NCBI RefSeq assembly: GCF_964213995.1
Contig: NC_135804.1
Span: 58,962,001-59,026,000, forward strand
Source of the DNA: Mustelus asterias
Taxonomy: Eukaryota
DNA: 64,000 nt
Direction: 5' to 3'
The notes beneath the pieces were generated by a model. It was not told where the DNA came from, did no database searches, and saw nothing but the letters and a program-made list of their open reading frames with translations. A program made the translations under genes and the position numbers. This document shows, piece after piece, positions 1,591 through 63,920 of this stretch. Positions within the stretch are counted from its first letter, which is position 1; the number at the start of each line of letters is the position of its first letter.

Positions 1591-4500
1591 ATTATTGCAT
1601 TTCCATGAGCTGTGCTTCTTTCAATTACCTAGCCCAAAATAAAATATTTGTTTTATAGTGAAGATGTCAATTAATTCAAAAGTGAATGTTGGGTAACGTT
1701 TGAGTAAAAGCAGCTTTTGCTGTGTTCCTAGGGTAAATGGAGGAAGAGTAGGAAGTTCTTCTCGATTTCATAGCTAATATTTAAACCCCATCCAACATCA
1801 CTGAAATAAACCTGGCGAGTATCAGTATTTTGCGGGACTCTGCTGTGCACAAGCTGTGGATCATTTCCTACAACAGTATCTATACCTCAACAAGTACTTC
1901 ACTGGCTGTAAAACGCTTTGTGAGGTCCCATGGTCAAGAAAGGCGGTATACAAACGTTCTTTTCTTCAAATCTTACATATGTAATGGGTATTTTTCAATA
2001 AATTTGATGTGCAACACATCGCACCATCCTCTCTATAGCTTGAAACCTATCTATAAGAAGCATTGAATTGCTTATTGAAGACAGTGTGTGATGGTAGCTA
2101 TAACAGATGGAGATGTGTTTGAACCCTTGGAATAAACTCAATGTTATCTTTCTTTCCGCTACCTTGTTATGTCCTTAAGTCTTCCACAGTGTGTTACTCG
2201 GCTCAGATACAACTTGGGAGGCTAATTTAATATTAGATAGTCAAAATAGTAACATGATATGGAAATGGATCACAACAATAATCGATAAAGAGTTTTATAT
2301 TTCATTTTTATTTAAGTGACTATTTTGATAGTTTAGAGATCATTTTGCAGCGTTACTGTCACTCCTGAAAAGCCTTATTCCACATGTACTGATCAAGCCC
2401 TGTATTGTTGCAGGTGTTCTTCTTACAAAGGCCCAACAAACCATGGATCTTTGCATCTCGTCAGATGGATTGCCATAGAGTTCTCCTTTCTCCTGGCTAA
2501 CATTATTCCCCCCAACCAGCATTACTAATTGCTGATTATCATATTGCTTTTTATGTGACCTTTCGTTTTGCTAATTGTCTGTCATCTTTCTCTAGATTAC
2601 AACAGCTGAAAACTTTCAAAAGTACTTCATGGTTGAGAAGGCTCTGAGGAGTGGTTGTGTTGCTATACGAGTTGTTTTTTATTTTTCTAGTGCTATTAAT
2701 GGGATCTTGCGATTAGAAAATGTGTTTCCAGGTTTGTCTACTTCAAAAGCAATTAATGTGAAGCACATCGGGACATTTCAGAAGCGATGTAGTGTTGTGT
2801 TTCATATGAATGCAGGTCGTTCTATCTTTCATCACGGAGGCATAGCTGAAAAAAATGAAAAATTGACAAGAATTTGGAATTTCCAAGCATTCTTGGAAGT
2901 TAGTGAATCAAATGTTTGTTAAACACATTATGATGGTTCAGTCGCAGGTTCATGGTTGATGCCACAGCATTCAGCAACAAGCTTTTCTCACTGTCAAAAT
3001 AAAACTCCCACTTCTAATGTAAACCCAGAGCCCGGGCTCCACTGGATTCCAAAAAATGGATGGACGTTCCACTGCTGGGATTAGAGATTGCTTCCTCATT
3101 TGGGCGAGTTTAGGGCGAGGGGGCACTGTTTTGAAATTAGGGGTCGCCCTTTCAGGGCAGTGATTAGTTTTTTTGTCTCTCAGAGAGTTGTGCAACTTTG
3201 GAACTCCCTGCCTGAGAAGGAGGTGGTAGCGGGGTCAAAGACAAAGAACAAAGAAAATTACAGCACAGGAACAGGCCCTTTGGGCCTCCAAGCCTGCAAG
3301 GACTATGCTGCCCAACGGAAATAAAAACCCCTACTATTCCGGGGATTATATCCCTCTGTTCCTACCCTATTCATGTATTTGTCAAGATCCCCTTAAATGT
3401 CACTATCGTATCTGCTTCCACTGCCTCCCCTGGGAGCGAGTTCCAGGCACCCACCACCTTCTGTGTAAAAAACTTGCCTTGTACATCTCCTTTAAACTCT
3501 GCCCCACGCACCTTAAACCTATGCCCTCTAGTAATTGACTCTTCCAGCCTGGGAAAAAGCTTCTATCAACTCTGTCCATGCTACTCATAATCTTGTAGAC
3601 TTCTATCAGGTCGCCCCTCGACCTCTGTCGTTCCAGCGAGATCAAACCAAGTTTCTGCAACCTTACCTTATAATTAATGCCCTCCGTACCAGGCAACATC
3701 CTGGTAAATCTTTTCTGTACCCTCTCCAAAGCCTCCACATCCTTCTGGTAGTGTGGCAACCAGAAATGAACACTATATTCCAAGTGCGACCTAACTGAGG
3801 TTCTATGAAGCTGCAACATGACTTGCCAATTTTTAAACTCAATGCCCCGGCCGATGAAGCCAAGCATGCCATTTGCCTTCTTGACTACCTTATCCACCTG
3901 CGATACCACTTTCAATGACCTATGTACCTGTACATCCATATCCCTCTGCCTATCAATACTCTTCAGGGTTCTGCCATTTACTGTGTATTTCCCATCTGTA
4001 TTAGACGTTCCAAAATGAATTACCTCACATTTGTCTGGATTGAACTCCTTCTGCCATCTCACCACCCAAGTCTTCAACCGATCTATATCCTGCTGTATCC
4101 TCTGACGGTCCTCATCGCTATCCACAATTCCACCAACCTTTGTGTCATCTGCAAACTTACTAATCAAACCATTTTCCTCCAAATCATCTATATATATTAC
4201 AAACAGCAAAGGTCTCAGCACTGATTCCTGAGGGATGCCACTTGTCAGCGCCCTCCATTCAGAAACACACCCTTCCATTGTTATCCTCTGTCTTCTATGA
4301 CCAAGCCAGTTCTGCATCCACCTTGCCAGCTCACCTCTGATCCCGTGCGACTTCATCTTCTGTACCAGTCTACCATGAGGGACCTTGTCAAAGGCCTTAC
4401 TGAAGTCCACGTAGACAACACCCACTGCCCTACTCTCATCAATCATCTTCATCACTTCCTCGAAAAACTCAATCAAGTTAGTGAGACACAACGTCCCCAT

Positions 4501-4702: not shown

Positions 4703-6546
4703 CAGTAAGAAGTCTCACAACACAGCTAGTGAAAAAGGTTGGATCTCATGGGATAAAGGGGGAGGTGGCTAGATGGGTGGAGAACTGGCTTGGTCACAGA
4801 AGACAGAGGGTGGTAGTGGAAGGGTCTTTTTCCGGCTGGAGGCCTGTGACTAGTGGTGTTCCGCAGGGCTCTGTATTGGGACCTCTGCTGTTTGTGATTT
4901 ATATAAATGATCTGGAAGAAGGAGTAACTGGGGTGATCAGTAAGTTTACGGACGACACAAAACTGGCAGGACTTGCAGATAGTGAGGAACATTGTCAGAG
5001 GCTACAGAAGGATATAGATAGGCTGGAAATTTGGGCAAAGAAATGGCAGATGGAGTTCAATCCTGATAAATGCGAAGTGATGCATTTTGGTGGGAATAAT
5101 GTAGGGAGGAGCTACACGATAAATGGAAGAACCATAAAGGGTGTAGAGACGCAGAGGGACCTGGGTGTGCAAGTCCACAGATCTTTGAAGGTGACGTCAC
5201 AGGTGGAGAAGGTGGTGAAGAAGGCATATGGCATGCTTGCCTTTATAGGACGGGGCATAGAGTATAAAAGTTGGGGTCTGATGTTGCAGATGTATAGAAC
5301 GTTGGTTCGGCCGCATTTGGAATACTGCGTCCAGTTCTGGTCGCCACACTACCAGAAGGACGTGGAGGCTTTGAAGAGAGTACAGAGGAGGTTTACCAGG
5401 ATGTTGCCTGGTATGGAGGGGCTTGGTTATGAGGAGAGATTGGGGAAACTGGGGTTGTTCTCCTTGGAAAGACGGAGGATGAGGGGAGACTTAATAGAGG
5501 TGTATAAAATTATGAAAGGCATAGATAGGGTGAACGGTGGGAAGCTTTTCCCCGGGTCGGTGGTGACGTTCACGAGGGGTCATAGGTTCAAGGTGAAGGG
5601 GGGGAGGTTTAACACAGATATCAGAAGGACATATTTTACACAGAGGGTCGTGGGGGCCTGGAATGTGTTGCCGGGCAAGGTGGTGGAGGCGGACACACTG
5701 GGAACGTTTAAGACTTATCTAGACAGCTATATGAACGGAGTGGGAATGGAGGGATACAAAAGAGTGGTCTAGTTTGGACCAGGGAGCGGCGCGGGCTAAT
5801 TGTTCTTTCTTTCTCGTTTCAAGGCTTCATTTTATGATCATCTTGCTGGTGCCAGTACAGAGCGAGACTGCGGATAGTTGGGAACCTGTCTCGGGGGCAG
5901 GGAATTCAGATGGTGTTCGTAAAGCAGAAGTGGAAATGAATAGGGTTGGGAAGCATTTTCTGATCAGGGCCAGTGTGATCTCCTGGACTCGTTTCGATCG
6001 CCTCAGGGGGTCGGAGAGGAATTTCCCAGATTTTTTTCCCCCATATTGGCCCTGGGGTTTTCACTCTGGGTTTTCGCCTCTCCCTGGAGATCACATGGTC
6101 TGGAATGGGGGGGGGGGTGGGGGTGAGTTAATAGGTTGTGATGAACAAAGCATCATAGCTGTGAGGGACAGCTCGGTGGATAGGATATTAGGATGTAGAT
6201 AGGCTGGAAAATTGGGCGGGGATCCTGGATTCAGGATTCAATCCTGGACCGGGGAGCAGCGCGGGCTTGGAGGGCCGAAGGGCCTGTTCCTGTGCTGTAT
6301 TGTTCTTTGTTGTTGTTGTTGTTGAACACCAGGTTAAAGTCCAACAGGTTTATTTGGTAGCACAAGCCACAAGCTTTTGGAGCACTGCTCCTTCATCAGG
6401 ACTCACAGGACTTACCTGTTGAAGGGGCAGTGCTCCGAAAGCTTGTGGCTTGTGCTACCAAATAAACCTGTTGGACATTAACCCAGTGTTGTGAGACTTC
6501 TTACTGTGTTTACTCCAGTCCAACGCCGGCATCTCCACATCATGAT
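4703..6546. mobile_element. Penelope-terminus palindrome split by the CR1 insertion
   Basis: cagtaagaagtctcacaacac...caggttaaagtccaacagg arm plus an inverted arm at about 6412-6506. TSD ctcccctg(t/c)a at 4693-4702 and 6547-6556. Confidence 0.85.
4724..6324 (+). mobile_element. Young 5'-truncated CR1 LINE with long 3' UTR
   Basis: Uninterrupted 347-aa RT C-terminal ORF (SGVPQGSVLGP, FTDD), (TTG)n tail, and TSD aacac at 4719-4723 and 6325-6329. Confidence 0.93.
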
Positions 6547-18009: not shown

Positions 18010-18950
18010 TAGATTGGGAGAGTCAAATTATCTCCAAATTTGCAGATGATACAAAGTTGGGTGGGGGGGCGGGTGGTGAGGGGCGAGCTGTGAAGAGGAC
18101 GCTTCAGTGTAATTTGGACAGGCTGAGTATGTAGGCAACTGCATGGCAGATGCAGTACAATGTGGATAATTGTGAGGTTATCCACTTTGGTAGCAAAATA
18201 GGAAGACAGATTATTATTTGAATGGGTGTAAATTGAGAGAGGTGGATACTCAATGAGATCTTGGAGCCCTTGTGCATCAGTCACTGAAAGTAAGCACGCA
18301 GGTAGAGCAGGCAAGAAGGCAAATGGTATGTTGGCCTTCATAGTGAGAGGATTTGAGTAGGGATGTTTTGCTACAATTGTATAGGGCATTGGTGAGACCA
18401 CATCTGCAATATTGTGCGCAGTTTTGGTGTCCTTATCTGAAGAAGGATGTCCTTGCTATAAAGGGAGTGCAGTGAAGGGTTACCAGGCTGATTTCGGGGA
18501 TGGCATGTCTGTCATATGAGAGACTTATTTGGTTAGGATTATATTCATTGGGGTTTAGAAGAGTGAGAGGGGATCACATAGAAACTTGTGAAATTCTAAC
18601 AGTTTTAGACAGGGTAGATTCAGAAAGAATGTCCCCAATGATCGGGGAGTCCAGAGCTGGGGTTATAGTTTGAGGATCAGGGGTAAACCATTTACAACTG
18701 AGGTCAGCAGAAATTTCTTCACCCAGAGGGTGGTGAATGTATGGAATTCATTACCACAAAATGTAGTTGAGGTCAAAACATTGTCTGATTTCAAGAAGAA
18801 ATTAGATATAGCTCTTGGGGCTGAAGGGATCAAGGGGTTTGGGAGGAATGGGGATCAGGATATTGAATTCGATGATCAGCCATGATCAAAATGAATGGCG
18901 GAGCAGGCTCAGTGTGCCTTTGGCCTACTTCTGCTTCTAGCTTTTTTGTT
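18010..18950 (+). mobile_element. CR1 3' fragment
   Basis: tccaaatttgcagatgatacaaag (SKFADDTK), RNFFTQRVVNVWNSLP and 3' UTR. Confidence 0.85.
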
Positions 18951-23735: not shown

Positions 23736-24487
23736 ATTTTGAATTTGTTTTGAAACAAATAATTGGCTCCAAAACGAACTCTCCTTTAATTACTGGGATA
23801 ATTTACCTCTGTTGTATCTGATAAAATCTTAAATGGTTTATTTTAAAGCACATATAGAATTATTTGAAAATCGGTGCAGGGGTAGACTATTCGGTCCATC
23901 GAGCTGTTCCGCCTTTATTAAGATAAAGGTGATTTGATTGTGGCCTTAGCTCCACTTTTCTGCCACCCACCCATCTCCCCACCACCCCAACCCGTCATAA
24001 CTTTTGACTCCCTTTTCATCAAAAATCTGTTTAACTCAGCCTTGAACATATTCAATGACCCAACCTCCGCTGGTTTCTGGGGAAGAGAGTTACAAAGACC
24101 AAAGTCCCTCTGAGTAAGACATTCCTCCTTATCTCCGCCTGAAAAAGGACACTTCTTTTAAAACTGTTCCCCCTATTTCTCCAGAACATAGATATCCTCC
24201 AAATATATTTACATCGTTGCTAACCAAGGCTAACCAGAGGAGTTCGTTGCCTTTTGCGAGGCATTGTTAGCCTGGAGATATAGTCGAGGGAGCTCTATAC
24301 TGGCTATTGTCCCGGGATAATATTCTATTACTTTCAATCTGCAAACTTTGGCCCAAATATTCACCTTCAAAGAACATTAATTTTCACTGCCTTTGGATTG
24401 ATGCGGAGTTATTTGCTGACTTACACCAGTGTTTTCTTTGCAAAACGACAATGCCTTCTGGTAATAATGGTGTATCTCACCTTTCAC

Positions 24488-25056
24488 CAGTGCCGGATTT
24501 AGACTTGGTGAGGCCCTAAGCTATATAAAGCTTGGAGGCCCCTTGTTAAAAAGTTACACCAAAAGATCTCACAATGTTGCGTACCAAAACAGGACCTTGC
24601 GTCGCCACAAAAAAATTGAAAACATAATTATGCCTTTTAATTATTTAATAGCAAGGTATTTAAAGTGAAAAATACAAATTATTTTCAAATGAATGCATTT
24701 ACTGATTATATATTTATCATTTGGCTGGCTTGATCTCTCTCATAGATTATAATATAGTATACCCTGGAAACAATACTTAAAGGTAATTAAAATAATTTTA
24801 AGATACATTAATATATATGCAAAATGCTGACAAAAGAAGTAATCAGGATCACTTTTATTAATATAAGTAATAATGAAAACTGTCAACTTTTGGTAATTTT
24901 TTGAGTTGCTCTTCAAGCTGGTGCTTTCTTTTTCTTTTCTGGTATCCGCTCTTAAATGTTCTCTTCATTGTAAACCTTCCGAAATTTTGTGAGGCCCCTG
25001 CGGATTGTGAGGCCCTAAGCTGTAGCTTGTTTAGCTTATGCCTAAATCCGGCACTG
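24488..25056. mobile_element. hAT-type non-autonomous DNA transposon (MITE)
   Basis: 15-bp TIR cagtgccggatttag / ctaaatccggcactg. 8-bp TSD cctttcac (24480-24487) and cctttgac (25057-25064). AT-rich non-coding interior with repeated tgaggccc motifs. Confidence 0.88.
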
Positions 25057-25172
25057 CCTTTGACAGTACCTCAGTTTAAAATAATTCCCAACGATGACCA
25101 CGAGCGCCATTATTATCAATAAAACCGCTAAATGTCGACACAGCAACAAGAAATTTGTGACTTCAGCAGCAC
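25042..25172 (-). CDS. IgSF VJ-C1 receptor, exon 4 (TM with Arg; read-through into MITE gives tail KLRYCQRQCRI-stop)
   Basis: cttttgcag acceptor in phase 1 gives GAAEVTNFLLLCRHLAVLLIIMALVVIVGNYFKLRYCQ. The ancestral exon end is at 25058. The TAG at 25044-25042 lies inside the MITE TIR. Confidence 0.8.
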
Positions 25173-25450
25173 CTGCAAAAGACGATCGAAAATGTAAGAT
25201 CCAGGGGTGTTAAGTTCAATTCAACCAGCAAGAAAAACCCAGAGACTGATGGGATCATGTAATCATGTAAATCTCTTTTTTTAAATATTCAAAATAAAAT
25301 GCCAACACATGAAACAATTCACAATCTGAACAATGAATCCTCACTGTAAAAAATGAATTGATCAAATGTTAACGTGTTTATCGATGTGTTTGTGTCTTCG
25401 GCAAAATGACAAACGGGATAACTTTTCTGAATTGAATGAATGAACGGTAC

Positions 25451-25750
25451 CTTCCAAGTTATAATTGACTTTAGCTGGAGTTTGAAGAGAAACATGAGAC
25501 ACTTGGCAGCTGTATGTCGCTCTGCTGCGGGTTGGCGCCATATCTTTGAGAGTGCTGAAAACTTCATACGTCCCCACCGTGGTTCGCTCTTTGGTAGTAT
25601 TGATCCCAGTTTCAATTTTTGCGTCGTCCTTATACCAAGTCACATTGAGATCTCCAGGGTAAAACTTAGTTGTTTTACACAGGAGAATCGGGGGAGTAGA
25701 TGGACGGATTTTGGACTCAACCAAGCTGATTGTCAGAGGAATGGGCCGAA
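25451..25750 (-). CDS. IgSF VJ-C1 receptor, exon 3 (C1-set domain)
   Basis: ttcctcccaag acceptor and G|gtaccg donor, 300 nt, phase 1-1. C1 hallmarks LLCKTTKFYPGDLNVTW and YSCQVSHVSL. Confidence 0.92.
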
Positions 25751-26959
25751 CTTGGGAGGAAAAAGAACATTCTTTATTGATTGAAAAGTTAATTTTTACA
25801 TTATTTCTATTCAGAACACGAATTTAAGACGGGGCCGTTTAATACCATGTGTCATTGGAATGTTTTAAAATATTATTAAACGTGAAGCAAGAAATTACCT
25901 GGCGTCCTTAATGGAAACATTAAAAAAGTGGTAATGTATATGATCAGAGAGTCAAGGAGTGCAGAAAGAAGCTATTCTGGCCATCGTATCTGTGTTAGCT
26001 CCACGAAAGAGTTAGGCCACTCCAGTGAACCTTCTTCTGACCAAAGTTTCCACTTTAAGTATATATCTAACCTTCCCTTCAGAATTACTAAGTACTCGCC
26101 TTGCTACCAGCTAATGACTTTCAAACCCTAGAATCTGCCGCGCAATACAATTTCTCTTCTCCCCCTTACCCTTTTGGCAATTAGCTTAAATCTGCGTCCT
26201 CTGGTTAGCGAATTATGTTTGTCTGGCTTTCGAGTCACACCACTTTACAATGATGCAGAAATGCATTTTGCTCAATATTCTGGTTTCTGTTCTGCCACAA
26301 TAATCCAGTTAGTCACATTGACATATTTGTCCAGTTCCCTTTAAAACAGTCAATATATTCTGTTCGCATCACTGTTTCTGAAAATGCACCCAATGTCGTA
26401 CCAATCCTGCCCTCCCTTCAGCTATTTAGACATTCCTGTCAGAACAGATGAGGCTTATTTTAGTTCTAATAGTTACATTGCAATACTTTAATAAACTCTA
26501 TTCATTTCCAGACATCGTGATCTTCATTGACCCTCCAGAACTTTCGCTAGAAGAGCCGCATGGGCTCAAGACAAACCTCAGATCCTCGAGGCCGAGGTTA
26601 GAGGAGTTGAGCGGGAGAATTCCCCCGTGTAAGTGTTGAGAGGAACCGTAATAAAGGATCCCTGTAGTTGCTTTGTGCAATGATATTGTAAGTCTATTTG
26701 TAAAAGTCCTTGTGGTTTTGAAATCATAACGTTGCTCCAAAAGAAAGACTTACTATCTCGAGAACAAACTTTCATGCCAAATCTAACTGAATTGGAGTGA
26801 CCCATCTAATGCTCTTCCGCAGCGGAAATTCGCTACGGTTTATGCTTCCTGCAAAATTATAGGAACTTGCTCAACAAATATTTGAACAGAAACAACGAGA
26901 GGAAATATTTCATCCAAATATCAGACCATATTTAGCACACATCGATTTTGTGTGCATCA

Positions 26960-27065
26960 ACACAAACAGAAAATGCTGGAAAATCTCAGCAGGCCTGACA
27001 GTATCTGTGGAGAGAGAATAGAGCCAACGTTTCGAGTCAGGATAACCCTTCGTCAGAGCTCTGAC
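26960..27065 (-). mobile_element. Short Penelope terminus in the V-C1 intron
   Basis: The minus strand reads CTGACGAagggttatcctgactcGAAAcg, a hammerhead-like core. Confidence 0.7.
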
Positions 27066-27396
27066 TTAATCTTCCACCGAAGTTGTAATCACCAACTTGC
27101 TGTCAACCTTTCTGCACAGCCCCACAAAGTCAGGTTCTACACATTGCCACGGAGGGAAGAAAATCTTCTCCCCTGTATTCTGCAGGGAAATAGTATAATT
27201 GACCACATTGCGCTGAACACATGTAGAAACGCCTCTCCGTAAATCGACGATCTCACCCCTCGAGTATCTTGAGGTTGACGCTGGATACACAAAAGTGGAC
27301 AGGTATTCCATTCCCACACCCTTCCCCACCTCTTTGGTATTTTAGCAAATATCCATTGCACAACTGACACCGGCACCATCCGCATCAGGAACTCAC

Positions 27397-27711
27397 CGAA
27401 CACACGGAGCTCCGAGCCAGTTCCATTCCCAATCATTTTTCCCCCACAGTACACGGAGCAGTAATAGCGGCCAGAATCTTTGAAACTCACATTCACAAGA
27501 TGGAGGACGGCCCTCCCTTTTTTCAAAAGCTTATATTGTCTGTTGTTCGATTCCCCATCGTCCGAAAACTCGTCCTCATCATGTCGCCACCAGTGAACCA
27601 TGACGTCTGATTCCTCTTGGAAGAATGGGAGTGTGCAATAGAAAGTAATGTTTGTTCCGCTGAGAGCAACTTTGAGTGGCGGGATTTGGCCGATTGTGGA
27701 ATTCCCAACAA
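27397..27711 (-). CDS. IgSF VJ-C1 receptor, exon 2 (V-set domain with J-like GNGTGSELRV)
   Basis: ttctgatag acceptor and G|gtgagt donor, 315 nt, phase 1-1. Contains B-strand Cys (TFYC), C-strand Trp (VHWW), DSGRYYC and a GxG J-like G strand within one exon. Confidence 0.92.
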
Positions 27712-27877
27712 CTATCAGAAAGCAATATAAACACAAAAAAATAAACATCTCATTGTACAGATAAAGATAGAAACGAAATTAAAAAGAACAATAAAGAACC
27801 ATAAATGGAGATAAATCAATTGATCAAATATCACTATACAAATATTTGTTCTCTCTGTCTACTAAATATTAAGGTAC

Positions 27878-27917
27878 CTGTGTATGCAATCCCCAGGATC
27901 AGTATACATGGAAGCAT
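27878..27917 (-). CDS. IgSF VJ-C1 receptor, exon 1 (signal peptide MLPCILILGIAYT)
   Basis: ATG at 27917, 13 mostly hydrophobic codons plus 1 nt, then CAG|gtacc donor. Phase 1 joins in frame to the V exon. TATAAAA lies about 70 bp upstream. Confidence 0.8.
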
Positions 27918-27982: not shown

Positions 27983-28047
27983 TTTTATAAAAGGCCAGAG
28001 GAGAAATATGTCAGAGGCTGATGACATCACGTGCAAGTGATGTGGTT
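27983..28047 (-). promoter_or_regulatory. Putative proximal promoter of the IgSF receptor
   Basis: TATAAAA (minus strand, 27983-27989), CRE-like TGACATCA (28022-28029) overlapping E-box CACGTG (28028-28033), and RUNX site TGTGGTT (28041-28047). Confidence 0.55.
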
Positions 28048-39379: not shown

Positions 39380-42300
39380 AATCATACAGTGCAGAAGAGG
39401 CCCTTCAGCCCATCGAGTCTGCATAGACATGCAAGAACCACCTCCTTCTGCACTGTAGGAATTCTATGATAAGATTATGAGGGGCATGGACAGAGTGATA
39501 GCGGGCAGCTGTTCCCCTTAGGGTTAGTCATGAGGGCCTTTCAGCCCATCAAGTCTGCACTGACAAGAACCACCTAAACTACCTAACGCTAATCCCATTT
39601 ACCAGCACTTGGCTTTGAATGTTATGATGTGCCAAGTGCTCATCCAGGTACTTTTTAAAGGATGTGAGGCAACCTGCATCCACCACCTTCCCAGGCAGCA
39701 TATTCCAGATTATCACCACCCTTTGGCTAAAAAACAACTTTTCTTCATATCCCCCCTAAACCTCGAACTGGTCTCCCCTCGTGACTGACTCTTGAAATAG
39801 CTGCTCCCTATCCCTCTGTCCATGTCCCTCATAATCTTATCATAGAATTCCTACAGTGCAAAAGGCCATTCAAACCATTGAGCATGCACCGACAACAATC
39901 CCATCCAGACCCGACCCCCGTAATCCCACATATTTATCCTGTTAATCCCCCTGACACTACAGGGCAATTTAGCATAGCTAATCAACGTAACCCACACAAC
40001 ATTTGGCTGAGAGAGGAAAACAGAGCACCCAGAGGAAACCCACGTGGACAGGGGAGAACTCCACACAGACATTCACCCGAGGCCGAACTCTGGTCTCTGG
40101 TGCTGTGAAGCAGCAGTGCTAATCACTGTGCCACTCCAAATAAAAAGATTCAGACTTCTTGTACTCCTTGATCAGGTCACTTCTCAGTCTTCCCTGCTCC
40201 ACCGAAAACAACCCAAGTCTATCCAACCTCACTTCATAAATGTTCTATCCAAAGCAGCACCCTGGTGAATACCCTCTGCACCTCATCCAGTGCAATCACA
40301 CCCTCCCCACATTGTGGCGACCAGAACTGCACAGAGCACTCCAGCTGTGGCCTCATACAGCTCCAACATGATCACCTTGCTTTTGTAATCTATGTCTCAA
40401 TTGATAAAGGCATAGATATGTCTTTCTCACCACACAACTAACTTGTCCTTCTGAGAGCTATGGACAAACACACCAAGGTCCCTTTGTTCCTCAGAACACC
40501 CTAGTGTCATGCTGTTCATTAAATACTTCCATGTCAAATTACTCTCTCCAAAGTGTATCACTTCATGCTTTTCAGGGTTAAAGTCCATGTGCCACTTATC
40601 TGCCCATCTGTCTACATCTTCCTGTAGTCCAAGACACTGAATCGCACTGTTAACCACCTGGCCATCTTTGTGTCATCCACAGGCTTACTAATCCTATCCC
40701 CCACATAGTCATCTATCTCATTTATACAAATGATGACTAATAGGAGACCCATCACAGATCCCTGTGGCATGCCACTGGACACTGGCATCTAGTCACGAAA
40801 GCAGGCTTCTGTCTTCACGCTCTGTTTCCTACAACTAAGCCAATTTTGAATCCACCTCCTCAAAATTACTTTGCATCCCATGTGCATTTGTCTTCTTTAT
40901 AAGTCTTCTATGTGGGTCTTGTCAAAGGCTTTGCTGAAATCCATATCGACTACATCAACTGCACTACCCTCATCTACACCTGGTCACTTCAAAAAATTCA
41001 ATCAAACTTTTTAGGCAAGACCTCCCTCTGCCAAAGCCATGATGACTATTCCTGATCAAACCTTTCCTCACCAAGTGGAGATAGATTCTCTCCTTCAGGA
41101 TTTTCTCCAATAGTTTCCCTACAATTGACAAGAGACTCACTGGTCTGTAGTTCCCTGGCCTATCTCTACAACCCTTCTTCAATAGTAGAACAACATTAGC
41201 TATTCTCCAGTCCTCTGGCACCTCACCCACAGCTCAGAGGGGAATTAAATATTTGAGTCAGAGCCCCTGTAATCTCCTCCCACAGCAGCCTGGGACAACA
41301 TTCACCCAGAACTGAAGATTTGTACATTTTTAAGCCTGCCAACAACTCCAAAATCTTGTCACTCCCTATGTTAGTTTGCTCAAGAACCTTGCAGTCTCTC
41401 TCCTGGAGTCCCATACCGTCACCCTCATTCTCTTGCGTGAAGTCAAATGTGAAGTAGTATTTGTTCAACACTTTCCCAATGTCCTCTGGCTCCTCCTACA
41501 GATTGCCCCCTTGGTCCCCACTCTTTCCCTGGATATCCTCTTCCATTGATATATTTATAGAATATGTTGGGATATTCCCTACCTTTACCAGGCAGATTTT
41601 TCTCATATCCACTCTTTGCCTTGTTGAGCACCACCCTGCACTTTCTGTACTTCACTAATGCTTCCACTGATTTGCTCCCCTTGTACCTGCCAAAAGCCTC
41701 TTTTCCTTCTCATCATACCATGAATACCTCTGGTCATCCATGGTTCTCTGGGCTCATTACTCCTTCCATCATCCTAGAAGGAACATGTTAGGTTTGTGCC
41801 CTCCCCATTTCCTTTTTGAATGCCCTCCCACTGCTCTTCTGTAGATGCCCCTGCAAGTAGCTGTTTCCAATCTGCCTTGGCCCGATCCTACCTCTTCTTA
41901 CTAAACCCACTCTTCCCCCAATCCAAAATATTTACTGTTTTTACACACCTCTGTGAATTGTGCACATATTTGCTCCTCAATTTCTCGCTGCCAATCTGGG
42001 GGTCTATAATGAACACCTAGTAACGTGGCTGCCCCTTTTTTATTCTTATGCTCTACCCACAAAGCCTCTTTCGATGCCCCCTCCAAGTTATCATCTCTTC
42101 TTACTGCAGTAACTGATTCCTTAACTAATAATTCTCTTTTACCCCCTCCCCTAAATAGTCTATATCTTGGAATTTTGAGCTGCCAATACTGCCCTTCCCG
42201 GAACCACATCTACTACTAGATGTGATCGCTACTATAATACAATTCCACGTGTCAATCCTCACCCTTAAATCACCTGTAATACTCGTGACATTAAAGTAGA

Positions 42301-55817: not shown

Positions 55818-56814
55818 AAGAGCGATTCTCCCAAAAAAAGTTCTAAGTGCTGAATTCGTGGGAAAACTCGTGTAAATCAGGATTATTTTTTCAGTGGGAG
55901 TTCAAACTCGAATCTCCCACACTCTGTGCACTGCAGAGGTCACAATCGTGAATATCATTAAAAGCTCGGGGGGTAGGGCCTATTCACGCCAGAGTCTGAC
56001 AGTTCCGGGCCTCTGCGCATGTACAGAGGCCCCAAACTGTCAACCTCCTGTTTGCTGGCCAGCGGTTGAGGAACCCCTGCAGTGCTGCCCCTCCATCCCC
56101 CCCCCTCCTCCTCCCCACAGCCCGATCGTGGCCCCCACAAGCATTCCCGGGCCAGCCCTGACCCTCCCCTGGCCTGGAGCGCCCGATCTCCAGGCCCGCC
56201 CCCAGCCTGCCTCGATCGCTGACCTCTCTCCAATCCCGACCAATCCCCATCCAGAGTGGCAGCGAGAACTCCCACCGCCACTGATTGCCCCTAGGCCTTG
56301 TCCCCTTGGCATTGCTCCATGCCCAGTGGGCAGTGCCAAGGTGTCCCCTGGGCATGGGCTCTTTGCCCCTTGGGCAGTGCCGGGGGCAAAGGCTGGCACT
56401 GGTAGGGTGTCCATGTCCGGGGCACCAACACCCCATCCGTCCAACTCCCTTGGGGGACCCCGCTTGCTCCCCCTTCACTCCAGCCTGGTCTCCCGCTAGT
56501 TCCCCGAAAGTGGGGAGCGACTCTAAACCCCACCCGATTGAAATTTGACTGGCGAGATGGGAGATGTTGTCAGGCCCAGAGACTTAAGTCCTGGGCCCAA
56601 TAATCACATTAAAATTACATTCAAATAAGATTAAAATAACTTATCTGCTGTTCCCGCCAGTTTCCAGCGTGGTCCCGAATGCGGCAAATATCCGTCGCTG
56701 GGAGATGCGCGCATGTCGGGAATGCATACACGAATCCGACAAATCGGTGCACACGTGATTCTCCCAGCCAGACCTGCCAAAAAATTAGCAGGTCGGGATG
56801 GGAGAATCGCAGCC
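55818..56814. mobile_element. Harbinger-type MITE in OGFOD1 intron 4
   Basis: TIR core gcgattctccc / gggagaatcgc, 3-bp TSD atg, subterminal tctaagtg. Confidence 0.75.
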
Positions 56815-57240: not shown

Positions 57241-57990
57241 ATAAGAACCTAAGAAATAGGAGCAGGAGTAGGCCATCTAGCCCCTCAAGCCTGCCCCACC
57301 ATTCAATAAGATCATGGCTGATCTGAAGTGGATCAGTTCCACTTACCCGCCTGATCCCTATAACCCCTAATTCCCTTACCGATCAGGAATCCATCTATCC
57401 GTGATTTAAACATATTCAACGAGGTAGCCTCCACCACTTCAGTGGGCAGAGAATTCCAGAGATTCACCACCCTCTGAGAGTAGAAGTTCCTCCTCAACTC
57501 TGTCCTAAACTGACCCCCCTTTATTTTGAGGCTGTGCCCTCTAGTTCTAGTTTCCTTTCTAAGTGGAAAGAATCTCTCCATCTCTAACCTATCCAGCCCC
57601 TTCATTATCTTATAGGTCTCTATAAGATCCCCCCTCAGCCTTCTAAATTCCAATGAATACAAACCCAATCTGCTCAGTCTCTCCTCATAATCAACCCCTC
57701 ATCTCCGGTATCAACCTGGTGAACCTTCTCTGCACTCCCTCCAAGGCCAATATATCCTTCCGCAAATAAGGGGACCAATACTGCACACAGTATTCCAGCT
57801 GCGGCCTCACCAATGCCCTGTACAGATGCAGCAAGACTTCTCTGCTTTTATATTCTATCCCCCTTGCGATATAGGCCAACATCCCATTTGCCTTCTTGAT
57901 CACCTGTTGCACCTGCAGACTGGGTTTTTGCGTCTCATGCACAAGGACCCCCAGGTCCCTCTGCACAGCAGCATGTTGTAATTTCTTTCC
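57241..57990 (-). mobile_element. Young CR1 3' fragment in OGFOD1 intron 4
   Basis: QRDLGVLVH...RNFYSQRVVNLWNSLP with one frameshift. Confidence 0.92.
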
Positions 57991-58475
57991 ATGGAAAGAT
58001 ATTTCTCCAGGGAAATCTTGCGAAGGCTGATCAAGAAGCATTCTTTATCCTGCTAAAGGTGTTACATGAGTGCTGACAACTGTCCAGTGCTTTGCACAAA
58101 AGGTTTCTCCTCACGTGAGGCAGGATGCATAGTATTAACAGGGTATTTGATCATTGGCCCATCACAGTTGAATGTGCTTTTGCATGTTCACTCTGCAGCA
58201 CGGGCCATTGAATTATATGCAAAGGCCAATTTGTTTTTGTCTGCCTACGACAACATTTGCCAGGATCAGCAAACTCAGTACAGATCAGTGATGGATTGTA
58301 GGACTTCCTTTGCCTGCGTAGCTTGGCGTACAAGATTTTGGATGTTACTCACTAAGCCATCAGTAGAGCCCTGGAGGAATACATTTTTAAAAATGCACAA
58401 ATTAACCAGTCAAAATTGCTAAACTGAAAATGAAATACTTAAGCTGTACTAAAATTTAAACCAATGCTGTTGCAG

Positions 58476-59488: not shown

Positions 59489-59740
59489 GTACAGAAATTC
59501 AGAATATTCTGTAAATAGCGCTGAAAAATTAAGTGGTATCTGCACCTTATGAATTGATTTGGTTTCTGTGCCACGTAGCAGGATATATTAGGCATTGCTA
59601 TTCTTTGTTTTTTTTATGAGTGGGTGTTTGCTATTTATAAAGACATTTATCATTGGAATGTGATTTAATAAAGCAACAAATAGCTTATTCTCTGACTGAA
59701 TTCAATGCTTAATGCTGCTCTGCATACTTACCCTATTCAG

Positions 59741-59869
59741 GTGTCCGAAGTTCTGTCGGAGGGGAAATGTCGTCTTTCTGTCAGTGGCTGGTTCCATGGG
59801 CCATCATTGGAGAGGCCACCTCGCTACATTGAATCTTTTCCTCCTCGATTACCATATTTTGCAAGTGAT
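59741..59869 (+). CDS. OGFOD1: OGFOD1 exon 7
   Basis: [29 protein letters not shown]..., 129 nt, ag/gt. Confidence 0.95.
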
Positions 59870-60594
59870 GTAAGCTCAGATCCTACCATCTTGGCCACAA
59901 TTAGCTTACCAAAGTTTTGATTAGATTAAGATCATTAACCACTAGCTTTTGGGGATGGGAACTGAGTGCTGTTGTGAAATCTCATATAATCCTTTCACTT
60001 CTAAGACCTGGGTTTCTATCCAGTCCAAGACAGATGGGACAAAAGAGGGCTCTTCTTTTCTGCTGTTTAATATATGAAATGAGCTTAGGCTGTAAAGTAC
60101 AGTATCAATATGCACATCATTTGTGACAAATTGGCATTCATCAGAAAGGCCACAAAAATGGCTGGCATTGGAAATGGAAAGAATCATAAATGATACAGTA
60201 CAGGTTGATCTTCCAGAGTGGAGTTGTTGACCAGAGAAAGGAAGTTTTGCTCTGTGTCTAACCTGAGTTATATCTTATCTGTGAGTGCTTGATGGCAATG
60301 GTGGTTATCCAAATCAATGAAATCAATGTAAAGTTCACCAAAAGTACATTTCTAAAAAATTAGAATAACAATAGGCCATCTGTAGCCTCTTGATCTTGTT
60401 CTGCCATTCCAATAACTCATAACAATAACACCAACAACTTGTATTTTTACAGCAGCTTTAGCATTATAAAATATCTTGATACCCTTGCCTAACAAGAATA
60501 TATCTTTGTCTTTAAAATTACAATTTACCCATCAACAACATATCCTTTTGATGGAGAGAGTTCCAGAATTTCATTTCCCTTTGTGTTTTTTTAA

Positions 60595-62550: not shown

Positions 62551-62694
62551 AACTGTAACTTTAAATACTGAATTAGAGCGCAGAACCAGTCCCATACCTA
62601 GAACAGAGCAGGAAGCTGATACTTTGGTGTCACTTGAATACTAAGATTGTTCTAATCAGATGAAATACATTTGTTTCTTTTTATCATGTTTCAG

Positions 62695-62808
62695 GAAGAA
62701 ATTCTTTATGACTGGATCAATCCAATTTACTTGGATGTTTCAACTCAAGTTCATGTCCAGGATGAGTTTGAGGAGAAATCTGAGATACTTCTAAAGAACT
62801 TTTTCAAG
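62695..62808 (+). CDS. OGFOD1: OGFOD1 exon 8 (gene continues beyond the window)
   Basis: [38 protein letters not shown], 114 nt, ag/gt. Confidence 0.95.
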
Positions 62809-62957
62809 GTGAAAACTCAGTCGGGGATTAGTTCAGTTGAATGGCAAGAGCCCTTTTCAAAAAATGTTTGTGGAACACGAACAGGGATTGGATGTGTTTC
62901 AATGAGAACAGCAATGGGAAGGCCCATGACGTGTATCAATTTCTTTGTTCAAATTGT

Positions 62958-63920
62958 TGTAGGGAAATATCCCTTACCAGTGCAGAATAGAAGTTGAGTC
63001 GCAAATCAAGGTTCAAAGCGTGTCTTTATTGTACAATTACTGGGATCCCAGGGAGACCCCCGTAGCCAGCTCAGAAACAGTGGCTTGGCCACGTTGATCT
63101 CAATTAAATCACATCAGCGGTGTATCTTTATAGAGTTTCAAATTCAAGCGGGAACATTTGATTATGCATTTTTACAATATGTATAAAGTGGTCTGTCAGT
63201 TTAAAAAGTCCCTAGGAAGTTTCATCGATTAGCATTTGTATGGTGTGTGTTCGTGTTAATGGGATTACTTGGTCCTGCCCCGGTGTCTAAATGCGTTTCC
63301 CATTATCTTCTCTATGTGTCCTCTTATCTGAATTGATCTTATTGTTTCGTGTCTGTGTTTCCTGCTTGTGAGATTGAGTGTTAATGTCATCCTGTCCTGT
63401 TGGATGTCTGGAGTATTTCATTCTAATCTTTTATTCTTGTATCTTAGTTTATCAGATTTTTATGTCTGCCTTGGCCGAATTGGTAATATTTCAGTGATAG
63501 CTTGGTTTTGATAGCCCACTCTATGTCTCGTTTCGTAGGGATCTTGATCGTCCTTGGCCAGTTTAAAATGCAGCTGCGCGCTGTTGCTAGGCAGATTAGG
63601 GATCTTCCGTAGTTTTTGAAATTCGTGAGTCTCTCAGCTGTGCAGGGGGGGACCCGATCGAATATCCATCCGGGGGTGCCCCTCTGCATTGTTGGCCCGT
63701 TATGAGTGGTGCCAATTAGTCCAATATGTAAATATGTTTGATGATACAAATATGGTTTTCTGGAAAATTTCCTCCTTCAAAATGTTGGTATGAAGTGTCC
63801 TCTTTTATTCACTGCTAATTTTTTCGTGATGTTTATCACATACAGATGTAATACATGATGGTGAATTCAGCTCTTGTGGGAAAGGAGAAGGCTGTCATTT
63901 TCTGGCTAACAATTGCCACA
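62958..63920 (-). mobile_element. Possible LTR-like repeat
   Basis: TG...CA ends. On the minus strand TATAAA (near 63130) precedes AATAAA (near 63028). No TSD confirmed. Confidence 0.35.

What the first reader, a model, noticed from the sequence alone, without database searches (positions are those of the whole stretch)
25042..27917. Non-rearranging VJ-C1 receptor with a charged transmembrane segment (antigen-receptor-like architecture)
Seen: four exons splice in frame (leader, V, C1, TM; about 260 aa). V and a J-like GNGTGSELRV strand are joined in one germline exon with no recognisable RSS, followed by a true C1-set domain. The TM carries Arg-His near its N-terminus (FLLLCRHLAV). There is an acidic patch (HDEDEFSDDGES), an extra Cys in the CDR3-equivalent loop and several N-glycosylation sequons. 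Established: V plus C1 is largely restricted to Ig/TCR, tapasin, SIRP, B7-H6 and PRARP/VJC1-type genes, and a TM Arg couples NKp30/NKp46 and TCR alpha/delta to ITAM adaptors. Inference: an activating lymphocyte receptor resembling the proposed pre-RAG antigen-receptor ancestor, here next to OGFOD1 rather than in an Ig/TCR cluster.
Basis: partly seen in the sequence, partly recalled or inferred. Interest (0 to 1): 0.85.

Follow-up and report, generated by a model that had tools for sequence, protein, structure and literature searches.

The report
Shark SIRP-like receptor with charged membrane segment
This is an apparently intact shark gene for a small cell-surface immune receptor, one member of a large cartilaginous-fish family that resembles mammalian SIRP on/off receptor pairs, so it is a useful family member rather than a unique relic of the antigen-receptor ancestor.

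Summary
Four minus-strand exons with GT-AG borders, all phase 1, read in frame: leader, a V domain with a J-like G strand, a C1-set domain, and a transmembrane segment with Arg-His and a short tail.

- **Family.** The gene is not a lone antigen-receptor-like relic. Its probable orthologue is a RefSeq model in Heterodontus francisci, auto-named "tapasin-related protein-like" (V 78%, C1 73% identity). Both belong to a family found in sharks, rays and a chimaera.
- **Two receptor types.** Of 36 family models with a membrane segment, 15 have a neutral segment and a long tail with ITIM-like motifs. 18 carry an Arg at one fixed membrane position, and 17 of those 18 have short tails. The window gene is of the Arg type.
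- **Closest solved relatives of the family profile.** UrIg2, SIRP alpha and gamma, and Ig chains.
- **Tail.** The last four codons and the stop come from a high-copy MITE.
- **Limits.** No RNA data exist for this organism, so splicing, expression and signalling are inferred.

First readers of this scan noted many similar VJ-C1 genes elsewhere in this genome; none has been followed up.

The parts
27983..27989 (-). TATAAAA motif 66 nt upstream of the ATG; a possible core promoter
   Evidence: Read directly from the sequence. Function not tested.
27878..27917 (-). Exon 1: ATG plus the first part of a split leader (MLPCILILGIAYT + 1 nt)
   Evidence: Colinear with the N-terminus of the Heterodontus model P0001 (MLPSILILLITHN). 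Donor CAG|GTACCT.
27712..27877 (-). Intron 1, 166 nt, phase 1
   Evidence: Acceptor ...CTTTCTGATAG|TT.
27397..27711 (-). Exon 2: end of the leader plus a V-set domain with a J-like G strand (NGTGSELRV), an acidic loop (HDEDEFSDDGES) and an extra Cys88
   Evidence: Pfam V-set 30.4 bits, Ig_3 31.2 bits. 78% identity to P0001. AlphaFold mean pLDDT 82.6, with the G strand broken at G96-T97-G98. Family motif NGTGSxLxV.
25751..27396 (-). Intron 2, 1646 nt, phase 1; it holds a very high-copy repeat at about 26926-27124
   Evidence: Contig word depth 1.5e5 to 9.3e5 in that bin. No second C1 exon was found in it by tblastn.
25451..25750 (-). Exon 3: C1-set domain
   Evidence: Pfam C1-set E 8.6e-14. FYP, 13 residues Cys to Trp, and CQVSH. 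73% identity to P0001. PDB sequence hits include Ig constant domains, UrIg2, SIRP alpha d3 and MHC II beta.
25173..25450 (-). Intron 3, 278 nt, phase 1
   Evidence: Acceptor ...GTCTTTTGCAG|GT.
25042..25172 (-). Exon 4: short stalk, membrane segment with Cys-Arg-His near its outer end, tail KLRYCQRQCRI, and TAG
   Evidence: An HMM of the membrane region of 36 family models ranks this piece first of 2121 six-frame pieces in the window (E 0.0064). Candidate donors lie after 25070 (AG|GTACTG) and, before the MITE arrived, at AAAG|GTGAGA; neither has a known downstream exon.
24488..25056 (.). MITE with 15-nt perfect terminal inverted repeats; it supplies the last four codons, the stop and an AATAAA (24859) of the receptor gene
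   Evidence: Inverted repeat I4. Contig depth 1e4 to 6e4 and loose ends exactly at 24487 and 25056. AATAAA position.
25057..25064 (-). Target-site duplication, copy 1 (gtcaaagg)
   Evidence: Matches copy 2 in 7 of 8 bases.
24480..24487 (-). Target-site duplication, copy 2 (gtgaaagg), followed by TGA, which was in frame before the insertion

Best explanation
The locus is an apparently intact gene for a type I membrane protein of about 261 residues. It has a split leader, one V-set domain with a germline J-like G strand, one C1-set domain, a membrane segment with Arg in its outer third, and a cytoplasmic tail of about 11 residues. It is the probable orthologue of an uncharacterised Heterodontus francisci RefSeq model. 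It is a divergent member of a multigene family found in cartilaginous fish that is built like mammalian SIRP paired receptors. Some members have a neutral, Gly-rich membrane segment and long tails with ITIM-like tyrosine motifs. Others have Arg in place of one Gly and short tails without such motifs.

Proposed mechanism: the V domain binds an unknown ligand. The membrane Arg pairs with the membrane Asp of a disulfide-linked ITAM adaptor, which delivers an activating signal. The outer-third position favours the FcR-gamma/CD3-zeta type over DAP12; that rule is recalled from mammals.

Shown here: gene structure, domain types, family membership, the fixed Arg column and its link with short tails.
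Inferred: expression, splicing in vivo, adaptor pairing, activating function and ligand.

A MITE landed in the last exon. It changed the C-terminus only from ...YCQR-stop to ...YCQRQCRI-stop, and it now carries the nearest poly(A) signal.
For: - **Gene structure.** Exons are in frame with GT-AG, phase-1 introns.
- **Domains.** Pfam V-set and C1-set both score above their cut-offs. The C1 sequence criteria are met (criteria from passages of PMC2785349).
- **Orthologue.** P0001 (XP_067906048.1) is colinear across the leader/V and V/C1 junctions, with 78% and 73% identity. It is sister to the window exons with SH-aLRT 100 in both the V tree and the C1 tree.
- **Family size.** 71 of the 203 proteins stored at that point match both exons. 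These reduce to 51 proteins with distinct V segments.
- **Taxonomic range.** 35 of 36 hits of the family profile are elasmobranch. Callorhinchus members also exist.
- **Two membrane types.** 36 of the 51 models have a membrane segment. 18 are Arg-type: 16 by script, and P0192 and P0196 added by eye. Of these, 17 have tails of 48 residues or fewer and 15 have no ITIM-like motif. 15 are neutral with tails of 67-193 residues, and all 15 have at least one ITIM-like motif. 3 are neutral with short tails.
- **Coexistence.** Both types occur on the same chromosome-scale contig in Heptranchias perlo and in Heterodontus francisci.
- **Membrane exon.** The window's membrane exon aligns to the family membrane HMM and is its top hit in the window.
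- **Closest solved relatives.** The family profile against the PDB gives UrIg2 at 3.6e-35 and SIRP alpha at 4.3e-31. SIRP alpha is colinear over V plus the first C1. SIRP gamma scores 8.9e-28, and Ig light chains 1e-25 to 1e-22.
- **MITE.** Supported.
- **No tail exons.** No ITIM-like exon appears in any of the six frames of the window.
Against: - No RNA run of this organism is indexed, and the three runs laid were DNA contigs. No junction, 3' end or expression is shown.
- Both Heterodontus isoforms end ...NLEGHPGNN with no membrane segment. The membrane exon therefore has no orthologue support.
- The membrane-exon HMM hit is modest (13 bits), and hydrophobic segments match easily.
- 15 of the 51 family models lack a membrane segment. 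All are automated models, and at least one (P0119) looks chimeric.
- The window gene has no close inhibitory partner in the sampled data; the next V domain is only 45% identical.
- Relationship to SIRP is by profile similarity only. Tail homology to bony-vertebrate SIRP alpha was not found (2 hits, both Callorhinchus, among 172 candidates).
- No phylogeny with named references was possible.
Confidence: 0.62

Rival explanations
1. One reading: the gene is a surviving relative of the non-rearranging V-J-C1 receptor that the RAG transposon invaded. On this view it is closer to Ig/TCR or UrIg ancestry than to innate paired receptors, and it signals like a TCR chain through its membrane Arg.
For: - The V exon is a single exon with a GxG(S/T)xLxV-type G strand, a split leader and a true C1 domain.
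- UrIg2 is the best PDB match of the family profile and of the C1-only profile.
- The top Foldseek hits include TCR V-beta and shark VNAR domains.
- The nearest named Atlas cluster is 'putative antigen receptor'.
- PMC2785349 argues that V-C1 receptors such as SIRP may descend from the antigen-receptor precursor (passages).
Against: - V-domain comparisons do not discriminate. PD-L1, PD-1, CD79b, NKp30, NCAM and titin score in the same range as TCR and Ig V domains.
- The family is large and has ITIM and Arg forms, the pattern of innate paired receptors.
- Multi-domain chains gain score from several C1 stretches, which inflates the rank of UrIg2 and Ig heavy chains.
- Linkage to the MHC or to the Ig/TCR complex is not shown. 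The only verified neighbour is OGFOD1.
Confidence: 0.12
2. The gene is decaying, or it encodes only a secreted V-C1 protein. On this view the membrane exon is not used, or the MITE has disabled 3' end formation.
For: - Both RefSeq isoforms of the closest relative lack a membrane segment.
- A MITE sits in the last coding exon.
- There is no transcript evidence.
- 15 of 51 family models have no membrane segment.
Against: - All four exons are open, with canonical splice sites and no frameshift over about 261 codons.
- The MITE adds only four codons and brings an AATAAA.
- The membrane exon is the best match in the window to the family membrane HMM, and its Arg falls in the family's Arg column.
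- Membrane exons are often missed by gene prediction, as PMC12227049 says of UrIg2 (section 7).
Confidence: 0.15
3. It is a B7-type ligand (NCR3LG1/B7-H6-like or CD276-like, as some relatives are auto-named) that is displayed to receptors on other cells, not a signalling receptor.
For: - B7 proteins are V plus C ectodomains with short tails.
- PD-L1 V domains are the best single-domain PDB matches of the V exon and of the V-only profile.
- RefSeq names several relatives NCR3LG1-like or CD276 homolog.
Against: - The C domain fits C1-set far better than the CD80-like C2-set_2 model (52.1 against 24.4 bits).
- The PD-L1 alignments stop at position 91 and do not cover the J-like G strand.
- A conserved membrane Arg opposed to ITIM-tailed siblings is the pattern of a receptor.
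Confidence: 0.07
4. It is a tapasin-related (TAPBPL-like) chaperone, as the RefSeq name of the closest relative says.
For: The automated name of P0001 and of several relatives. Tapasin has a C1-set domain and a charged membrane residue; the latter is recalled.
Against: - The protein has only a 13-residue leader exon before the V domain. There is no room for tapasin's large N-terminal domain.
- No tapasin or TAPBPR chain is among the best 60 PDB matches of the family profile.
- Relatives carry ITIM tails.
Confidence: 0.02

Closest known systems
SIRP family (SIRP alpha, beta-1, gamma) of mammals
   Same: - A V-set domain followed by C1-set domain(s) in a type I membrane protein.
- A family split into ITIM-tailed inhibitory members and short-tailed members with a basic membrane residue.
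- SIRP alpha (2wng) is the best non-immunoglobulin cell-surface receptor among PDB matches of the family profile. It is colinear over V plus the first C1 (profile 25-216 against chain 4-206, E 4.3e-31).
- The C1 criteria are the same as those shown for SIRP d2/d3 (PMC2785349 passages).
   Different: - One C1 domain, not two. Only 1 of the 18 aligned relatives, P0047 from Amblyraja, shows a second C1.
- Arg in the outer third of the membrane segment, not the central Lys of SIRP beta-1 (the latter recalled).
- A shorter V domain with an acidic loop in place of a clear C'-C'' hairpin.
- An N-glycosylation sequon inside the J-like motif.
- No orthology, synteny or CD47 binding shown.
- The tail search found no bony-vertebrate SIRP.
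UrIg / UrIg2, non-rearranging shark VJ-C genes (PMC12227049)
   Same: - A single-exon VJ domain, a split leader and C1-type domains, restricted to cartilaginous fish.
- UrIg2 (9dmx) is the top PDB match of the family profile and of the C1-only profile.
   Different: - UrIg2 has nine to eleven C domains and forms disulfide-linked dimers, and it lies in the Ig/TCR complex; UrIg lies in the MHC (section 7 and passages).
- The window gene has one C1 domain, an Arg membrane segment, many paralogues with ITIM tails, and OGFOD1 as its verified neighbour.
Activating receptors with a membrane Arg (NKp30, NKp46, Fc-alpha-RI and similar)
   Same: An Ig-type ectodomain, Arg near the outer end of the membrane segment, and a very short tail. 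NKp30 (3noi) is among the Foldseek neighbours of the V model.
   Different: Those receptors lack a C1-set domain. Similarity to NKp30 is no better than to many other V domains. Adaptor use by those receptors is recalled, and adaptor use here is untested.
Heterodontus francisci XP_067906048.1 / XP_067906047.1 ('tapasin-related protein-like')
   Same: - Probable orthologue: leader, V and C1 are colinear, with 78% and 73% identity.
- It keeps the extra Cys in the CDR3-like loop and 5 of the 6 sequons.
   Different: The models end ...NLEGHPGNN with no membrane segment. It is an automated, uncharacterised model whose name does not fit its architecture.

Membership tests
IgSF C1-set domain | (F/Y)(F/Y/H)P at the start of the BC loop | tested here: met
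   FYP in KFYPGDLNVTW. The criterion is quoted from PMC2785349.
IgSF C1-set domain | Exactly 13 residues between the strand-B Cys and the strand-C Trp | tested here: met
   C-KTTKFYPGDLNVT-W.
IgSF C1-set domain | xVxH after the strand-F Cys, and a Pfam C1-set score above the cut-off | tested here: met
   CQVSH. PF07654 at 52.1 bits against a cut-off of 21.
Germline-joined VJ domain (non-rearranging) | V and a J-like G strand (GxGTxLxV type) in one exon, with no RSS | tested here: met
   G-T-G-S-E-L-R-V at the end of exon 2. The strand break at G96-G98 in the model is consistent with a bulge. 0 matches to heptamer-spacer-nonamer. Ser replaces the usual Thr.
Germline-joined VJ domain (non-rearranging) | Full V-set topology with C' and C'' strands | tested here: inconclusive
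   Pfam V-set scores 30.4 bits against a cut-off of 26, but Ig_3 scores as well and I-set comes close. There are 58 residues between the Cys. Residues 43-56 are predicted as a loop, with pLDDT below 50 at 51-53.
SIRP family | V-C1-C1 ectodomain | tested here: not met
   There is one C1 exon. No second C1 was found in the introns or flanks by tblastn.
SIRP family | Orthology or phylogenetic grouping with SIRP, and synteny with the SIRP cluster | tested here: inconclusive
   Only profile similarity is available. No named reference sequences could be brought into a tree. The tail search found no SIRP. The neighbour is OGFOD1.
SIRP family | Binding of CD47 by the V domain | not testable with these tools
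   No binding data exist.
Paired activating/inhibitory IgSF receptor family | Homologous ectodomains on ITIM-tailed members and on short-tailed members with a basic membrane residue | tested here: met
   At family level there are 15 neutral long-tailed models, all with ITIM-like motifs, against 18 Arg-type models, 17 of them short-tailed. The window gene is Arg-type. No close inhibitory partner of this particular gene was found.
Paired activating/inhibitory IgSF receptor family | Association of the charged membrane residue with an ITAM adaptor | not testable with these tools
   Needs co-expression and co-precipitation.
Tapasin / TAPBPL | Large N-terminal domain before the Ig domains | tested here: not met
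   Only a 13-codon leader exon precedes the V exon, and P0001 starts the same way.
Rearranging Ig/TCR | Separate V and J segments flanked by RSS | tested here: not met
   V and the J-like strand are contiguous. There is no RSS match.
B7 family (NCR3LG1, CD276, PD-L1) | V domain plus a CD80-like C domain, with a neutral membrane segment | tested here: not met
   C1-set scores 52.1 bits against 24.4 for C2-set_2. The membrane segment carries Arg-His. Similarity to the PD-L1 V domain is partial, covering positions 12-91.

The most novel reading that the evidence does not exclude
The cartilaginous-fish V(J)-C1 family to which this gene belongs is a living representative of the primitive V-plus-C1 cell-surface receptor that Hatherley et al. 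(PMC2785349) postulated as the common source of SIRPs and of rearranging antigen receptors. Its Arg-type members, including this gene, already use the charged-membrane/ITAM-adaptor signalling mode that TCR chains later kept. The family would then make the pre-RAG receptor experimentally accessible, including its ligands, dimerisation and adaptors.
Probability: 0.12. Interest if true: 0.8.

Novelty: new member of a known kind. Interest (0 to 1): 0.4.

Why it matters
V-plus-C1 proteins outside Ig, TCR and MHC are few, and they feature in arguments about how antigen receptors arose (PMC2785349, PMC12227049, PMC10751288). A family of V(J)-C1 receptors found across cartilaginous fish, with clear inhibitory and Arg-type forms, would push SIRP-like paired receptors back to the base of jawed vertebrates. 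It would also give outgroup sequences for V and C1 phylogenies.

The family currently carries at least five contradictory automated names in RefSeq, which hides it from comparative work.

This particular gene adds two things. It is a divergent lineage, with V conservation (78%) at least as high as C1 conservation (73%) between two sharks. It is also a clean example of a transposon rewriting the C-terminus and 3' end of an immune receptor. Taken alone it is one family member, not a singular discovery.

Tried and rejected
**Transcript evidence.** The look-up of sequencing runs (kind rna) listed no RNA run for this organism. The three runs laid were DNA contigs. They confirmed the sequence and the repeats but showed no splice joints.

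**Orthologue locus.** I could not see whether Heterodontus has a membrane exon or the MITE.

**Lost inhibitory tail.** tblastn with 28 family proteins and a six-frame motif scan found no ITIM-type exon anywhere in the window.

**SIRP tail homology.** A search with the cytoplasmic region of P0079 gave only P0079 itself and one Callorhinchus paralogue among 172 candidates. This is uninformative.

**Assigning the V domain to a known V family.** Four approaches failed to separate Ig/TCR, PD-1, PD-L1, CD79b, NKp30 and NCAM:
- a single-exon PDB search;
- a V-only family profile, where multi-Ig proteins dominate because scores add over domains;
- an AlphaFold model with Foldseek;
- the ESM Atlas.

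**Named references for a phylogeny.** The family-profile search returned 35 elasmobranch proteins and one weak lizard MHC-II-like hit. Only the 8000 candidates sharing the most words were scored. No SIRP, Ig light chain, TCR, tapasin or B7 reference became available as a stored protein, so the trees are within-family only. They are quick searches with many weak forks.

**Rejected readings.**
- Tapasin-related: no N-domain.
- B7 ligand: the C domain is C1-type and the membrane segment carries Arg.
- Rearranging segment: no RSS.
- Second 'fossil' C1 exon in intron 2: no hit.

**Literature.** These searches found no description of this family:
- 'UrIg';
- 'PRARP' (only unrelated uses);
- 'signal regulatory protein' / 'cartilaginous fish' / 'paired receptors';
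- 'primordial immune complex' / 'antigen receptor' / 'shark';
- 'VJ-C1' (two papers, one relevant);
- 'SIRP' / 'elephant shark' / 'ITIM' / 'immunoglobulin superfamily'.

This covers only the held open-access library.
- The two papers most likely to mention such genes (J Immunol 2019, PMC6761025; J Immunol 2023, PMC10530332) are not held. What I say of them is recalled.
- I did not open the supplementary tables of PMC12227049 and PMC10751288. They may list such genes.

Full report

Yes. On the minus strand there are four open exons:
- 27917-27878: 13 codons plus 1 nt.
- 27711-27397: 104 in-frame codons.
- 25750-25451: 99 codons.
- 25172-25042: 42 codons plus TAG.

All three introns (166, 1646 and 278 nt) are GT-AG and phase 1. 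I searched each exon on its own. The total of about 261 residues is only a count.

The domain assignments hold:
- The V exon passes the Pfam V-set cut-off (30.4 against 26 bits) and the Ig_3 cut-off.
- The C exon is a clear C1-set domain (E 8.6e-14).
- The C exon also meets the three sequence criteria that Hatherley et al. list for C1-set domains. These are FYP, exactly 13 residues from Cys to Trp, and xVxH after the second Cys (passages of PMC2785349; checked).

A canonical RSS pattern has no match in the window.

OGFOD1 as neighbour is supported by an Ofd1_CTDD hit above the Pfam cut-off at 62671-62994 on the plus strand.

**2.

A MITE occupies 24488-25056.
- It has 15-nt perfect terminal inverted repeats.
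- It has an 8-bp target-site duplication matching in 7 of 8 bases.
- In the DNA contigs its word depth is 1e4 to 6e4, and loose ends fall exactly at 24487 and 25056.
- Its first 15 bases supply the last four codons and the stop.

Removing it restores ...TGT SAA AGG TGA. The tail was therefore already short (...KLRYCQR-stop) before the insertion. The insertion added QCRI and brought an AATAAA at 24859.

Two donor-like sites lie in the last exon: AG|GTACTG after 25070 and, before the insertion, AAAG|GTGAGA. No family-type tail exon exists anywhere in the window.

A first-reader note (s1-891092) had flagged the MITE. I confirm the element, but I read its effect on the protein as small.

**3. Relatives**

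The V exon has one close relative among 5.8 billion proteins: Heterodontus francisci XP_067906048.1, with isoform XP_067906047.1. RefSeq calls it 'tapasin-related protein-like'.
- It is colinear with the window exons across the leader/V and V/C1 junctions. This supports those two junctions.
- It is 78% identical in V and 73% in C1.
- It keeps the extra Cys.
- Both isoforms end ...NLEGHPGNN with no membrane segment. The membrane exon therefore lacks orthologue support.

An exhaustive HMMER search with the C1 exon gave 776 hits at E 0.001 or better. Among the 203 proteins stored at that point, 71 match both the V and the C1 exon, typically at 30-45% and 35-52% identity. These reduce to 51 proteins with distinct V segments.

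The relatives come from sharks (Heptranchias, Heterodontus, Carcharodon, Mustelus, Scyliorhinus, Chiloscyllium, Stegostoma). They also come from rays and skates (Amblyraja, Hypanus, Hemitrygon, Mobula, Pristis, Narcine) and from the chimaera Callorhinchus.

Their automated names are inconsistent: SIRP-alpha-like, SIRP-beta-1-like, tapasin-related-like, NCR3LG1-like, CD276 homolog, Ig lambda-like and MHC class II beta-like.

A profile of 18 members found 35 elasmobranch proteins and one weak lizard hit. Only the 8000 candidates sharing the most words were scored.

**4. The family is a paired-receptor family**

The alignment shows these family hallmarks:
- WW(K/R)xGE.EFL
- DSGxYxC
- NGTGSxLxV
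- VPPTPLK at the V/C1 junction
- FYPE..NLTWYKNG
- GLYEVSS
- YTCxVSH

In the membrane segment one column holds either Gly (..AGCAGGGL..) or Arg (..LRCAMGVL.., ..ICRSIGGG.., ..IYRSILG..).

Of the 51 models, 36 have a membrane segment:

| Type | Models | Tail length | ITIM-like motifs |
|---|---|---|---|
| Arg-type | 18 (16 by script; P0192 and P0196 added by eye) | 48 residues or fewer in 17 of 18 | none in 15 of 18 |
| Neutral, long tail | 15 | 67-193 residues | at least one in all 15 (LTYAALEL, VSYATLDL, TEYAQL and similar) |
| Neutral, short tail | 3 | short | not assessed |

The remaining 15 models have no membrane segment and may be incomplete.

Both types occur on one chromosome-scale contig in Heptranchias perlo and in Heterodontus francisci.

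On the V tree the two types are interspersed: 12 changes for 14 rows labelled Arg-short, against a shuffled mean of 12.5. That is the usual pattern for paired receptors. The tree is a quick search with many weak forks, however, and near-identical pairs within a species are hidden by the database clustering.

The window gene carries Arg in that column (LLLCRHLAV). Its membrane exon is the best match in the window to an HMM of the family's membrane region, first of 2121 six-frame pieces at E 0.0064.

The window exons and P0001 form a long, fully supported branch in both trees. No close inhibitory partner appears in the data I could reach.

**5. Relation to known families**

Against PDB sequences the full family profile gives:
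- UrIg2 (9dmx): 3.6e-35.
- An IgA1 heavy-chain entry (2rcj): 2.2e-33.
- SIRP alpha (2wng): 4.3e-31, colinear over V and the first C1.
- SIRP gamma: 8.9e-28.
- Ig light chains: 1e-25 to 1e-22.

No tapasin, B7-H6 or NKp30 chain is in the best 60. Chains with several C1 domains gain score, so the order among these should not be over-read.

The C1-only profile gives the same picture.

The V domain cannot be assigned:
- The V-only profile ranks multi-Ig proteins first, then TCR scFv and PD-L1.
- The AlphaFold model of the V exon has mean pLDDT 82.6 and strands A A' B C D E F G. It shows a break in the G strand at G96-G98 and an unstructured acidic 43-56 loop.
- Foldseek neighbours are TCR V-beta, CD79b, VNAR, PD-1, NKp30, PD-L1 and NCAM. 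All have similar scores, with TM 0.68-0.79.
- The Atlas gives generic V-set clusters.

The best description is therefore a V-type domain with a J-like G strand and a shortened C'-C'' region.

SIRP is the closest characterised system by architecture and logic. The family differs in four ways:
- It usually has one C1 domain.
- It uses Arg near the outer end of the membrane segment.
- It has a sequon within the J-like motif.
- Orthology to SIRP is not shown. The tail search was uninformative.

**6. Mechanism**

I commit to an activating-type receptor. The V domain binds an unknown ligand, and the membrane Arg pairs with the acidic membrane residue of an ITAM adaptor dimer.

In mammals, Arg in the outer third goes with FcR-gamma or CD3-zeta, and a central Lys goes with DAP12. 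This rule is recalled and was not tested here. On that basis I favour the former.

The shown steps are the anatomy and the family-wide link between Arg and the loss of the ITIM tail. Expression, adaptor use and function are inferred.

**7. Papers**

- PMC12227049: I read the outline, all of section 7, and passages.
- PMC10751288: passages only. It names NKp30, PRARP and UrIg as VJ genes and says several VJ-C1-type genes exist in tetrapods.
- PMC2785349: passages only.

None of these describes this family. Seven full-text searches found no paper that does.
- Two likely sources are not held.
- I did not open the supplementary tables. The claim 'not in print' is therefore limited to those searches.

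**8. Verdict**

The finding is real and well observed. The gene is best filed as a new, divergent member of a SIRP-like paired-receptor family of cartilaginous fish. That family is already present as automated RefSeq models under misleading names.

First readers of this scan noted it many times elsewhere in this genome. Those notes are unchecked, and I used them as leads only.

It is of moderate interest. The stronger reading, a pre-RAG antigen-receptor relative, is not excluded, but nothing here specifically supports it.

Noticed in passing
window 24488-25056 (TSD 25057-25064 and 24480-24487): High-copy MITE with 15-nt perfect terminal inverted repeats and an 8-bp target-site duplication, inserted in the last coding exon. 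It supplies QCRI-stop and an AATAAA at 24859. Before the insertion the frame ended ...YCQR-TGA.
   Followed up: yes
window 26926-27124 and 23941-24139: Two further repeats. The first, in the V-C1 intron, has contig word depth 1.5e5 to 9.3e5, the highest in the stretch laid. Many contigs join it to other places.
   Followed up: no
window 4018-4176 (-), 4783-5073 (+), 18018-18182 (+), 40568-40669 (-): Reverse-transcriptase-like fragments match residues 48-127 of the RefSeq model P0119 (XP_067905015.1). That model is therefore probably a chimera of a retroelement piece and a family receptor.
   Followed up: partly
window 59705-59917 (+) and 62671-62994 (+): OGFOD1-like exons: a weak 2OG-FeII_Oxy_4 hit, and Ofd1_CTDD above the Pfam cut-off. 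The gene runs head-to-head with the receptor, about 21 kb from its start if exon 1 is near 49.2 kb as a first-reader note says.
   Followed up: partly
window 55894-56548: A GC-rich stretch with long overlapping ORFs on both strands (up to 201 aa, rich in Pro, Gly and Ala). It looks like a compositional artefact or repeat rather than a gene.
   Followed up: no
window 57333-58041 (-): Two adjacent ORFs (111 and 116 aa) that look like the C-terminal part of a LINE-type retroelement protein. Similar pieces occur at 5353-5550.
   Followed up: no
P0001 / P0002 (Heterodontus francisci): Both isoforms of the probable orthologue end ...NLEGHPGNN with no membrane segment. Isoform X1 has 12 extra residues from an upstream acceptor in intron 1, and the in-frame end of the window's intron 1 reads similarly (..CFLIV against ..GCLIV).
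   Followed up: partly
family alignment A1, membrane region: A Cys next to the Gly/Arg column is conserved in most members (AGCAGGG, LRCAMG, ICRSIG; window LCRH). Several Arg-type members also end the segment with Asp/Glu-His or Asn-His. The meaning is unknown; interchain disulfide or adaptor contact are possibilities.
   Followed up: no
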